NCBI GenBank assembly: GCA_051294905.1
Contig: CM119373.1
Span: 30,132,001-30,196,000 of the forward strand
Direction: 5' to 3'
Origin: Botryllus schlosseri
Lineage: Eukaryota
Length of the DNA stretch: 64,000 nt
The notes beneath the pieces are model-generated. The model was given only the letters and a program-made list of their open reading frames with translations. It searched no databases and had not been told where the DNA came from. Numbering within the stretch: the first letter of the stretch is position 1; every line of letters starts with the position of its first letter. Positions 9,901-12,726 of the stretch are shown here, in pieces. The translations under genes and the position numbers were made by a program.

Positions 9901-10099
9901 TACCGCCTATTTGCAAGTGTTTTTCACTGTCTTGCTGGTTGTGTGTGATCTCAATTCACATTTTCGTTCTTTTGTTACGACTGACTTATTTATATATTTT
10001 GCAATATACCATCTGCCTGATAAATGCGTGTGTACCTGTTATTGAAATATTTTATGGGTATAATATTGGTGGACGAGATAGCACAGAATTAGGAGCCAG

Positions 10100-10778
10100 G
10101 GCTACAGTGGTCGATCTGTGACGGCCACTGGTGGCACCCATCCATCGTGATGGGGCATCCATGTGGCACCCATCAAGCGTGACGGGGCACGAACGTGGGT
10201 CCCTACCAGAGATGAGCATGGATTAGGATTAGGTTTTGAAAAAACAGGATTTGTGAAATTTTGTCGGATTTGGATTGGATTTGGATTAGACAATTTTTTC
10301 AGAACGGCTTAGGATTTGGATTGGATTTACCTATTTTCTGGGAGATTGAAATGTCGTATGGCGAATAACTTTATTCAGATTAGTTATTAATGTACTCATG
10401 GTTACTAAGTTATCTTGAATCAAGTGAATCGTCGGTTGTGAAAGAAAATTTTCGAATCCCTCCATTGCATAAATTAGTATTTTTTCTGAATTTCCAGTTG
10501 GAATCGGATTAGGATTGGACATGGACTTGAATATGAAAAAGTTATGGATTAGGATTTGGATTTGAAGGTTCGGATTTGGATTGGATTAGGACATAGAAAT
10601 TTCAAATCTGCTCATCTCTGGTCCCTACATAATACCAACAAACATAGCCGCCTAGTCCTTGTGGTACCCAGTTGGGTTACCCACATGGGTACGGTACCCA
10701 GTTGGGTTACCCACATGGGTACTAACTTTTACTTCACGTGGGTACCGTATGGTTCCCAAGTAGTCGTGTTACATGGGA
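10100..10778. mobile_element. Non-autonomous element rich in ACCCA/TGGGT palindromic repeats, host of the 10207-10620 MITE
   Basis: GGTACCCAGTTGGGTTACCCACATGGGTAC is tandemly repeated at about 10663-10722. The right end is TGTTACATGGGA. The left end is not resolved. Confidence 0.5.
10207..10620. mobile_element. hAT-type MITE
   Basis: TIR CAGAGATGAGCA / TGCTCATCTCTG. Perfect 8-bp TSD GTCCCTAC (10199-10206, 10621-10628). Subterminal GGATT(T/A)GGATT repeats. Confidence 0.95.
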
Positions 10779-12726
10779 TGGTTTTAAGCAATCTGAAATC
10801 GATCTTTAAGGAATTTGTAACCGATGACCCCGAAGCACTGATAACGTACATACGCAACGCCGATAATCAGGTTTCCTACAGTACCATACATATTCAACGC
10901 AATGAATGCACTGAAAAGCTTTCTCGAGTACGGAATGCATCACAAACCTCATCTCGTCATGAAAGTGGCGTCAACCGAGAACCAGCAACGAGTACTGACC
11001 ATCATTGACACGTATGGTCGAAACGTTAATCTGAAAAGAAAGCAACAAAATCAGAAGCATCTGCATAAAGACATGGACATAATAGACCACAATTGGGCGA
11101 AACTGAAAACGTACGTAGTGCATGCAGACTGTACTGTACATATAGCACGTTATAATACGATCATGTCTCAACAGGTGGCTGAAGTCCGAAGATTTCTCTG
11201 GATATCTGACGGTCAAGATGAGCGCGAAAAATTTTCGAGAATGCCCGGCCACAAACATCGTAAAAATAGGTTCAAGTTCAGGAACGAGGCTTTTGTACTT
11301 CAAAAGAGTCACCCACAATGAACTACTAAATCCCATAACATCTTTGGAGAACAGTGCAACTATAATCTTGCAAGTTAATCACAATAAGGACAAAGGAAAT
11401 CAGGGATTATTCGCGATGGCAAAGGGAGACTATGAACGCTTCAAAGTGGTATGTGTCGCATGCACGATGCATTTCTAAGCATTTCATTTTTCAGATATGC
11501 TTCTTCAGCAATAAAGACAGTGACGGAGAGCCGTTCGGGAACCTTTCGAATTGCGTAACTGCATATTTCAAAAAAAGGGGAATCTCACTTACGTATCAAC
11601 ACCTCAGGAAAATAGTGGCCACCATGGCCGGTACTTTGGACGATTACGAGTCAGGTCACGTTGCAATGTGGTCTGCCCATAGTGCCGAAATTGCTGCTGC
11701 ACATTACGACGGAATTAATCGCGCAAGCAAGACTGCAGTCGGGGTTGCCACATCGGGTCGACTAATGGATATTGTCATGACAAGCACGAACGAGTCGATA
11801 TACGCCGATGCTGCTGCACTGAAAGGTATTGTTTCACTCAGTCCCGTACATGATGCATGAAGCCATAGTCTATGTTGTGCGATGTACGTTACTAGTCATG
11901 TTGCTCTTGTCTGGTCTGTTACAGATCGACACGCAACAGCGGGATCTAGTCGGCAAAAATCAAAAAGTAACAACGAATAACTACTGTTCCCATTCGTACA
12001 ATTCCATACGTATACTATCATGTGAATAAAACAAAGGTTCGTAAAATGATGTTCACATAATATGTGTTGTTTCACTGATGAATCCATCCATACACCGTTC
12101 AATCCATCGTTAAGTTATTCCTGAAAGCATACAAGTTATGACTGCTATTCCTGAAAGAATACGGCAGCAGCCGGCGATTTGGCATAATAAATCAGGATAT
12201 GCAATGATAGCCGATGTACCTGATATATTCCATAAGAAAATATTACCGAATAACAGAAGGGGGATATCTACGGCATTTTTTATTTCCTGCTTGATGTAAA
12301 GTCCCTTGAATGTGACTCCATTCCTTAAGAAAACTAAAAACTATCGATACCGGCTAATTCGTCAACAGCTGAAGCAAGCTCATCTGAGACTTCAACTCCA
12401 CTATTTTTCAATTGATCTTCAAGAACGCTGATGCTATGAATAAATTCAATGTAAGCACGACATTTGGCAAAAAAGTCAACAGCCTACCGTTGCTGACTAA
12501 AATCCAATGATGCTTCCAGCCTCTCTCTACAGACATTCGATAGCGAAGATCGCTTACTTATGGGAACTGTTACCATCTTACTGAGCTTCTCGAACTCTCT
12601 TTTTCTCATTATCATCCTGCTTGACATGAAGACGAGAGCATGCTTGGCATGACACACCCAAAACTGATAAATCGGCAACCATGTAAGTCATTACTAACGG
12701 ATTCTCATAATAGTTGAAGTGAAGCA

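What the first reader, a model, noticed from the sequence alone, without database searches (positions are those of the whole stretch)
10030..11860. Spliced tyrosine recombinase hidden across ORF fragments
Seen: two short GT-AG introns (64 and 46 nt) exactly correct the frames between ORFs 10902, 11218 and 11432. The product has GTR, HNK, HLR, AH and HY in canonical order. Established: R-K-H-R-H/W-Y is the YR catalytic set, and Cryptons are eukaryotic DNA transposons with intron-containing YR genes and no TIRs. Inference: a Crypton-like or virus-like integrating element. No RT lies next to it, which argues against DIRS.
Basis: partly seen in the sequence, partly recalled or inferred. Interest (0 to 1): 0.75.

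Follow-up and report, generated by a model that had tools for sequence, protein, structure and literature searches.

The report
Spliced orphan gene, recombinase-like motifs only
The ORF fragments are one real gene with two short introns and two distant relatives, but no statistical or structural test could confirm that it encodes a tyrosine recombinase of a Crypton-like mobile element; that idea rests on short motifs.

Summary
They are the only strong-signal candidates that link the three ORFs. The ORF layout of a 47%-identical relative's contig matches both positions. The gene is real and spliced. That start matches the N-terminus of a second relative and lies in yet another frame, so this copy carries one extra frame change with no good splice signal, probably a frameshift.

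The motifs GTR, HNK, HLR, AH and HY are present. The family's two most conserved blocks sit at HLR and at H-x8-Y, with tyrosine-recombinase (YR) box II spacing. However, the motif is H-x-R rather than H-x-x-R, and the acidic residue after the first Arg is missing. The loose pattern is expected by chance about four times per window.

Every objective YR test failed exon by exon: Pfam, NCBIfam, PHROGs, PDB, hhalign, HMM and PSSM tests against 22 phage integrases, and AlphaFold (pLDDT 44-46). No reverse transcriptase lies within 6 kb.

Verdict: an orphan spliced gene, possibly a very divergent YR. Crypton membership is untested.

The parts
10778..11860 (+). One protein-coding gene of about 320 codons in four frame segments. 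It has two short canonical introns (64 and 46 nt) and one further frame change in the 5' part, a probable frameshift (count 1). The stop codon is at 11858-11860. The C-terminal 213 codons (last two exons) carry the YR-like motifs.
   Evidence: Stop-free frames. N-terminus matches P0002 residues 1-30, E 5e-7. C-terminal exon matches P0001 (47% identity, E 4e-22) and P0002 (E 7e-8). Introns. The ORF layout of the P0001 contig fits the same exon-intron plan. There is no second copy in the window.

Best explanation
Window 10778-11860 (+) is a real, spliced gene of a very small orphan family. It has two short introns (64 and 46 nt) that a 47%-identical relative appears to share. The other known relative is an internally shortened version. 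The family therefore looks like a low-copy repeated gene that spreads or duplicates as DNA, which keeps the introns.

The most likely product is a very divergent tyrosine recombinase: an N-terminal domain of about 110 residues followed by a catalytic domain of about 213 residues. By analogy with Cryptons, such a protein would cut and rejoin DNA through a phosphotyrosine link and move a small element without a reverse transcriptase. This copy has one extra frame change near its 5' end, so it is probably a decayed copy or one truncated at the N-terminus.

Shown: the gene, its homologues, the intron signals, the absence of a reverse transcriptase nearby, and the order and spacing of the motifs. 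Inferred: the recombinase fold, the activity, the mobility, and the reading of the 5' frame change as a frameshift.
For: Homologues: HMMER against 1.84 billion representative proteins gives P0001 (E 4e-22, 47% identity over 104 residues) and P0002 (E 7e-8). The P0002 N-terminus matches the stretch after the ATG at 10778 (E 5e-7).

Conservation: invariant columns cluster in Y-Q-H-L-R-K-x-x-A-T-M and S-x-H-S-x3-A-x2-H-Y-D-G-x2-R. In the two integrase alignments the Arg-to-His distance is 22-23 residues and the His-to-Tyr distance is 9. Here they are 24 and 9. By eye, upstream features are collinear with the phage integrases printed: G-x-P, a helix ending in basic-Gly-Ile, then Thr-aromatic before the Leu-Arg pair. 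The only stretch hhalign aligned was that G-x-P element, at the equivalent place about 25 residues before the His-Arg motif. A stricter pattern written after the fact hit only this ORF and 0 of 200 shuffled windows.

Introns: one strong-signal candidate per junction, with a 2.9% joint background. In the P0001 contig the boundary between the first two ORFs lies 385 nt upstream of the residue matching the first residue of the last exon. That equals the window's distance from the 64-nt donor. The boundary between the second and third ORFs falls at the place of the 46-nt intron.

Context: no reverse transcriptase in stop-free segments of 90 or more residues within about 6 kb, and no terminal repeats of the DIRS or Ngaro kind in 9000-13500.
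Against: No profile, structure or fold test recognises a recombinase.
- Pfam, NCBIfam, PHROGs and PDB searches on each exon-bearing frame and on P0001 and P0002 show no integrase family, even at E up to 10.
- hhalign probabilities are 0.09 and 0.11 against two integrase alignments.
- HMM scores are no better than shuffles.
- PSSM block tests are no better than unrelated ORFs of the window.
- AlphaFold models have pLDDT 43.8 and 45.9, so the Foldseek result is meaningless.

The first catalytic His is displaced (H-x-R), and the acidic residue three positions after the box I Arg is a Tyr. The box I and Lys region exists in a single sequence, so its conservation is unknown. Mobility is not shown: one copy in the window, ends unknown.
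Confidence: 0.45

Rival explanations
1. An orphan spliced gene family of unknown fold that is not a recombinase. The R, K, H, R, H, Y letters would then be a coincidence read into a conserved C-terminal helical region. It could be a lineage-specific host gene or an accessory gene of some other transposon.
For: All profile, PSSM and fold tests are negative. The loose motif is at chance level. The motif deviates from the canon at two of the seven active-site positions. Only three sequences define the conservation.
Against: The two best-conserved blocks coincide with box II in order and spacing, within two residues of the integrases, and several flanking features are collinear. The size and two-domain layout also fit a recombinase. 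The existence of a diverged copy and an internally shortened copy in one sequencing run is typical of mobile elements.
Confidence: 0.35
2. The recombinase gene of a DIRS/Ngaro-type retroelement that has lost its reverse transcriptase part.
For: DIRS and Ngaro elements are the commonest recombinase-bearing elements of animals (PMC3212892, PMC13465315). The window holds reverse transcriptase fragments at 32734-33840.
Against: Those fragments lie 21 kb away with other elements in between. No reverse transcriptase, RNase H or methyltransferase family hit was found in stop-free segments of 90 or more residues within about 6 kb. No inverted terminal or split direct repeats were found around the gene. 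Two introns that seem shared by copies only 47% identical would not survive passage through a spliced RNA copy (inference). DIRS recombinases match Pfam Phage_integrase (PMC13465315), and this protein does not.
Confidence: 0.05
3. The third exon encodes the nucleotide-binding start of a Rossmann-type methyltransferase. I-V-K-I-G-S-S-S-G-T would then be a glycine loop rather than recombinase box I.
For: PHROG phrog_4752 ('tRNA methyltransferase') matches the second frame at E 2.9e-4 (21.2 bits) and the exon alone at E 2.1e-3.
Against: The match is borderline, and its score rises when intron read-through is included. There is no Pfam or NCBIfam methyltransferase hit at E up to 10, and tblastn against phages finds nothing. 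The family's conserved C-terminal blocks do not resemble methyltransferase motifs (my own knowledge).
Confidence: 0.07
4. Chance ORFs in decayed repeat DNA, with no gene present.
For: The window is full of transposon debris.
Against: Protein-level homologues score E 4e-22, 7e-8 and 5e-7. Four consecutive stop-free segments lie on one strand.
Confidence: 0.02

Closest known systems
Crypton DNA transposons (CryptonA and CryptonI of animals; Kojima & Jurka 2011, PMC3212892)
   Same: A small element-sized gene with no reverse transcriptase next to it. The gene can carry introns. There are no terminal inverted repeats around it. The motif order is recombinase-like.
   Different: There is no match to the Pfam families that cover Crypton-type recombinases: DUF3504 and Phage_integrase. 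The ends and the 4-6 bp direct repeats are unknown. The copy number is unknown. The H-x-R motif replaces H-x-x-R. No phylogeny was possible.
DIRS/Ngaro/VIPER recombinase-bearing retroelements (PMC6681497, PMC13465315)
   Same: [quoted passage not shown]
   Different: There is no linked reverse transcriptase, RNase H or methyltransferase. There are no inverted terminal or split direct repeats. Introns are retained.
Phage and bacterial integrases (lambda Int type and Gram-positive/actinophage type; alignments A3 and A4)
   Same: The Arg-to-His (24 versus 22-23) and His-to-Tyr (9) spacings agree. So do the Leu-Arg-basic-x-x-Ala-Thr block and the G-x-P element about 25 residues upstream.
   Different: Similarity is statistically undetectable. 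The invariant Glu after box I Arg, the Gly-His pair and the Thr between His and Tyr are not kept.
Starship 'Captain' recombinases (DUF3435; PMC10104507)
   Same: They are eukaryotic DNA-element recombinases too divergent for the classical integrase profile.
   Different: There is no DUF3435 match. Captains are fungal, much larger, and head giant cargo elements, and nothing of that kind is seen here.

Membership tests
Tyrosine recombinase superfamily | Significant match to a recombinase profile (Pfam Phage_integrase, DUF3504, DUF3435 and others; NCBIfam; PDB chains) | tested here: not met
   Tested exon by exon and on P0001 and P0002: no such family even at E up to 10. hhalign probabilities 0.09 and 0.11 against 2 x 11 phage integrases. 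The joined product was not tested, so the result is weaker than a full-length test.
Tyrosine recombinase superfamily | Active-site residues Arg, (Glu/Asp), Lys, His-x-x-Arg, His/Trp, Tyr in order with canonical spacing | tested here: inconclusive
   Arg, Lys, Arg, His and Tyr are present in order. Spacings are Arg-to-Lys 33, Arg-to-His 24 and His-to-Tyr 9. The first His is displaced (H-x-R) and the acidic residue is a Tyr. The loose pattern is at chance level.
Tyrosine recombinase superfamily | Catalytic-domain fold | tested here: inconclusive
   AlphaFold on single exons gave pLDDT 43.8 and 45.9. Foldseek found no hit at E 0.001 or better.
Crypton | The recombinase is the only enzyme, with no reverse transcriptase in the element | tested here: met
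   No RVT, RNase H or other enzyme family in stop-free segments of 90 or more residues from 4097 to 17893. The nearest RVT_1 is at 32734-33840. The element's bounds are unknown, so this is a statement about the neighbourhood.
Crypton | No terminal inverted repeats; short (4-6 bp) direct repeats at the termini | not testable with these tools
   There is one copy in the window, and no DNA is available for the relatives, so the ends cannot be placed.
Crypton | Groups with Crypton recombinases in a phylogeny | not tested
   No Crypton sequence could be obtained by reference, and the joined product was left out.
DIRS/Ngaro | Linked reverse transcriptase/RNase H (plus methyltransferase in DIRS), and inverted terminal repeats with an internal complementary region, or split direct repeats | tested here: not met
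Virus-like integrating element (Polinton-like and similar) | Capsid, packaging ATPase or polymerase genes next to the recombinase | tested here: not met
   No such Pfam family in the flanking stop-free segments.

The most novel reading that the evidence does not exclude
The gene is the first described member of a new lineage of intron-bearing tyrosine-recombinase DNA elements of eukaryotes. The lineage is so divergent that no current recombinase profile detects it, and it has a shifted His in box II. If so, such elements are being missed by standard transposon annotation.
Probability: 0.3. Interest if true: 0.6.

Novelty: new variant of a known kind. Interest (0 to 1): 0.4.

Why it matters
If the product is a recombinase, it would extend the known range of eukaryotic recombinase-bearing DNA elements beyond what Pfam-based annotation can see. 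It would also give a case where conserved introns mark DNA-level spread. If it is not, it is a small orphan gene family found so far in this genome and in one sequencing run, of local interest only. Either way it shows that an ordered set of two- and three-letter motifs is not evidence by itself: here that pattern is expected several times per 64 kb by chance.

Tried and rejected
- Word-index protein searches with the third-frame piece, the second-frame piece and an alignment led by P0002 found nothing new. The length filter excludes full-length relatives of short queries.
- P0003 (1341 residues, E 6e-4, six repeated stretches) is a repeat protein. I treat it as a false positive.
- Scans of prokaryote genome contigs and of metagenome contigs (twice) were blank. 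tblastn against phages and plasmids was blank or noise.
- Exact look-ups of five window ORFs found no record, so the source organism stays unknown. Rfam and tRNA scans of the window were empty.
- Both relatives come from one sequencing run, SRR25569784. No DNA was available for them, and no paper names that run.
- My first splice enumeration was too narrow and wrongly suggested that no 64-nt intron existed. One search corrects it.
- I briefly favoured a frameshift at the second junction because of a weak match of P0002 to the first frame (E 17). I rejected that once the strong donor and the P0001 layout were seen.
Every search, fold and comparison was done exon by exon, by reference.

Full report
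**What is in the sequence.** On the + strand three stop-free frames overlap in sequence: 10845-11318, 11146-11475 and 11366-11857. A fourth, 10553-11005, lies upstream. The window is eukaryotic and rich in transposon debris: a PIF/Harbinger transposase, a Myb-like ORF, a THAP fragment, reverse transcriptase fragments and a weak helicase-like ORF. There is no second copy of the region in the window, at either DNA or protein level.

**The gene is real.** I searched the third-frame piece with HMMER against 1.84 billion representative proteins. It found only two true relatives. P0001 has 148 residues, 47% identity and E 4e-22. P0002 has 210 residues and E 7e-8. A third hit, P0003, is a repeat protein at E 6e-4 and I regard it as a false positive. 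Both relatives are unnamed ORFs from one sequencing run, SRR25569784, on contigs of 2259 and 1343 nt whose DNA could not be delivered.

So the gene starts at 10778 and ends at the stop at 11858-11860. It has four frame segments, not three.

**The introns.** Many GT-AG pairs would repair each junction, 38 and 15 respectively. The same geometry slid over the window gives both by chance in 2.9% of placements. The filter was chosen after the fact. My earlier enumeration was too narrow and is superseded.

Independent support comes from the ORF layout of the P0001 contig. Its three consecutive ORFs are 1017-1388, 1385-1729 and 1713-2159. The residue of P0001 that aligns with the first residue of the window's last exon lies at nucleotide 1770. 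The boundary between the first two ORFs is 385 nt upstream of that point, which is exactly the window's distance from the 64-nt donor. The second boundary lies where the 46-nt intron lies. The middle ORF has 114 residues against 110 in the window's second frame. This assumes equal exon and intron lengths and could not be checked on DNA.

The first ORF of that contig covers in one frame what the window splits into two frames. The window's extra 5' frame change has no candidate with good splice signals among 57 GT-AG options. I therefore count it as one probable frameshift in this copy. I do not give its place.

**Is it a tyrosine recombinase?** The five motifs are present and in order. The Arg-to-His and His-to-Tyr distances are 24 and 9. 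In two sets of phage integrases that I fetched and aligned, they are 22-23 and 9. By eye, further features are collinear with those integrases. The only stretch hhalign aligned lies at the equivalent place upstream of the His-Arg motif.

The case against is substantial.
- The motif is H-x-R, not H-x-x-R. When the Leu-Arg pair is aligned with the phage motif, a Gln falls at the His position.
- The acidic residue after the first Arg is missing.
- The loose pattern is expected 4.4 times per shuffled window.
- Pfam, NCBIfam, PHROGs and PDB sequence searches on every exon-bearing frame and on both relatives show no integrase family, even at E up to 10.
- hhalign gives probabilities of 0.09 and 0.11.
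- HMMs built from the integrase alignments score the pieces no better than shuffles.
- PSSM block tests with a spacing constraint score no better than unrelated ORFs of the window.
- AlphaFold on the last exon (with its two relatives) and on the third exon alone gave pLDDT 43.8 and 45.9.

The catalytic domain is split over two exons. All searches were run exon by exon, by reference, which lowers their power.

One weak contrary signal exists. A PHROG annotated as a tRNA methyltransferase matches the second frame at E 2.9e-4, and the exon alone at E 2.1e-3. Pfam and tblastn give it no backing.

**Context.** No reverse transcriptase, RNase H, methyltransferase, capsid or polymerase family was found in stop-free segments of 90 or more residues between 4097 and 17893. 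The nearest reverse transcriptase fragments are at 32734-33840. No terminal inverted or split direct repeats bracket the gene in 9000-13500. Directly upstream, at 10100-10740, lies a foldback, repeat-rich stretch. Its relation to the gene is unknown.

**How it most likely works.** The family has one diverged full-layout copy and one internally shortened copy in a single sequencing run, plus the window's copy with a frame break. That is how low-copy mobile elements look. Introns shared between copies only 47% identical point to propagation as DNA rather than through a spliced RNA copy (inference). Together with the motif layout, my best reading is a very divergent recombinase of a Crypton-like DNA element, decayed in this copy (confidence 0.45). 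The main rival is an orphan gene of unknown fold in which the motifs are coincidental (0.35).

**Membership.** I do not file the gene under Crypton. The profile criterion was tested and not met. The ends, flanking repeats and phylogeny could not be tested. DIRS/Ngaro membership is rejected on linkage, terminal repeats and introns.

- I built no joined, repaired or consensus sequence.
- In my private reasoning I once recalled a short stretch of phage lambda integrase from memory.
- Before I had concluded that the 5' frame change is probably a frameshift, the script output printed the coordinates of one weak GT-AG option there. The 10778-10870 reference used and my notebook entries also place the frame change approximately. 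I do not repeat those coordinates here and have deleted nothing.
- Nothing in the window looked human.

Noticed in passing
window 10100-10740: A foldback, repeat-rich stretch lies directly upstream of the gene's ATG. It has two 32-nt tandem units on the left (10131-10194) and two perfect 30-nt palindromic tandem units on the right (10663-10722). A perfect 14-nt inverted repeat (10205-10218 / 10609-10622) brackets about 390 nt of GGATT-like repeats. The single-strand fold z-score is -2.7. It could be a separate MITE-like insertion or the gene's upstream region. There is no other copy in the window.
   Followed up: partly
window 2834-3613 (+) and 5071-5445 (-): A PIF/Harbinger-type element: a DDE_Tnp_4 transposase ORF (E 7e-33) and a Myb/SANT-like ORF (E 1e-14) on the opposite strand.
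   Followed up: no
window 32734-33840 (+): Two adjacent stop-free segments match RVT_1 (E 3e-7 and 4e-6). This is a broken reverse transcriptase of an unclassified retroelement, 21 kb from the finding.
   Followed up: no
window 14103-14525 (-): A weak THAP domain match (E 7e-4, below the Pfam cut-off), possibly a remnant of a P-element-like or THAP-bearing transposon.
   Followed up: no
window 22900-25610 (+): A run of long stop-free segments in GC-richer DNA (GC 0.47-0.54). Only a weak AAA_30 match was found, at 25045-25605 (E 2e-3). It may be a decayed Helitron-like helicase gene, but this was not examined.
   Followed up: no
window 11146-11475 (+): A borderline PHROG match of the second frame to phrog_4752 'tRNA methyltransferase' (E 2.9e-4). 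Its score drops when the query is cut back to the exon. It remains unexplained.
   Followed up: partly
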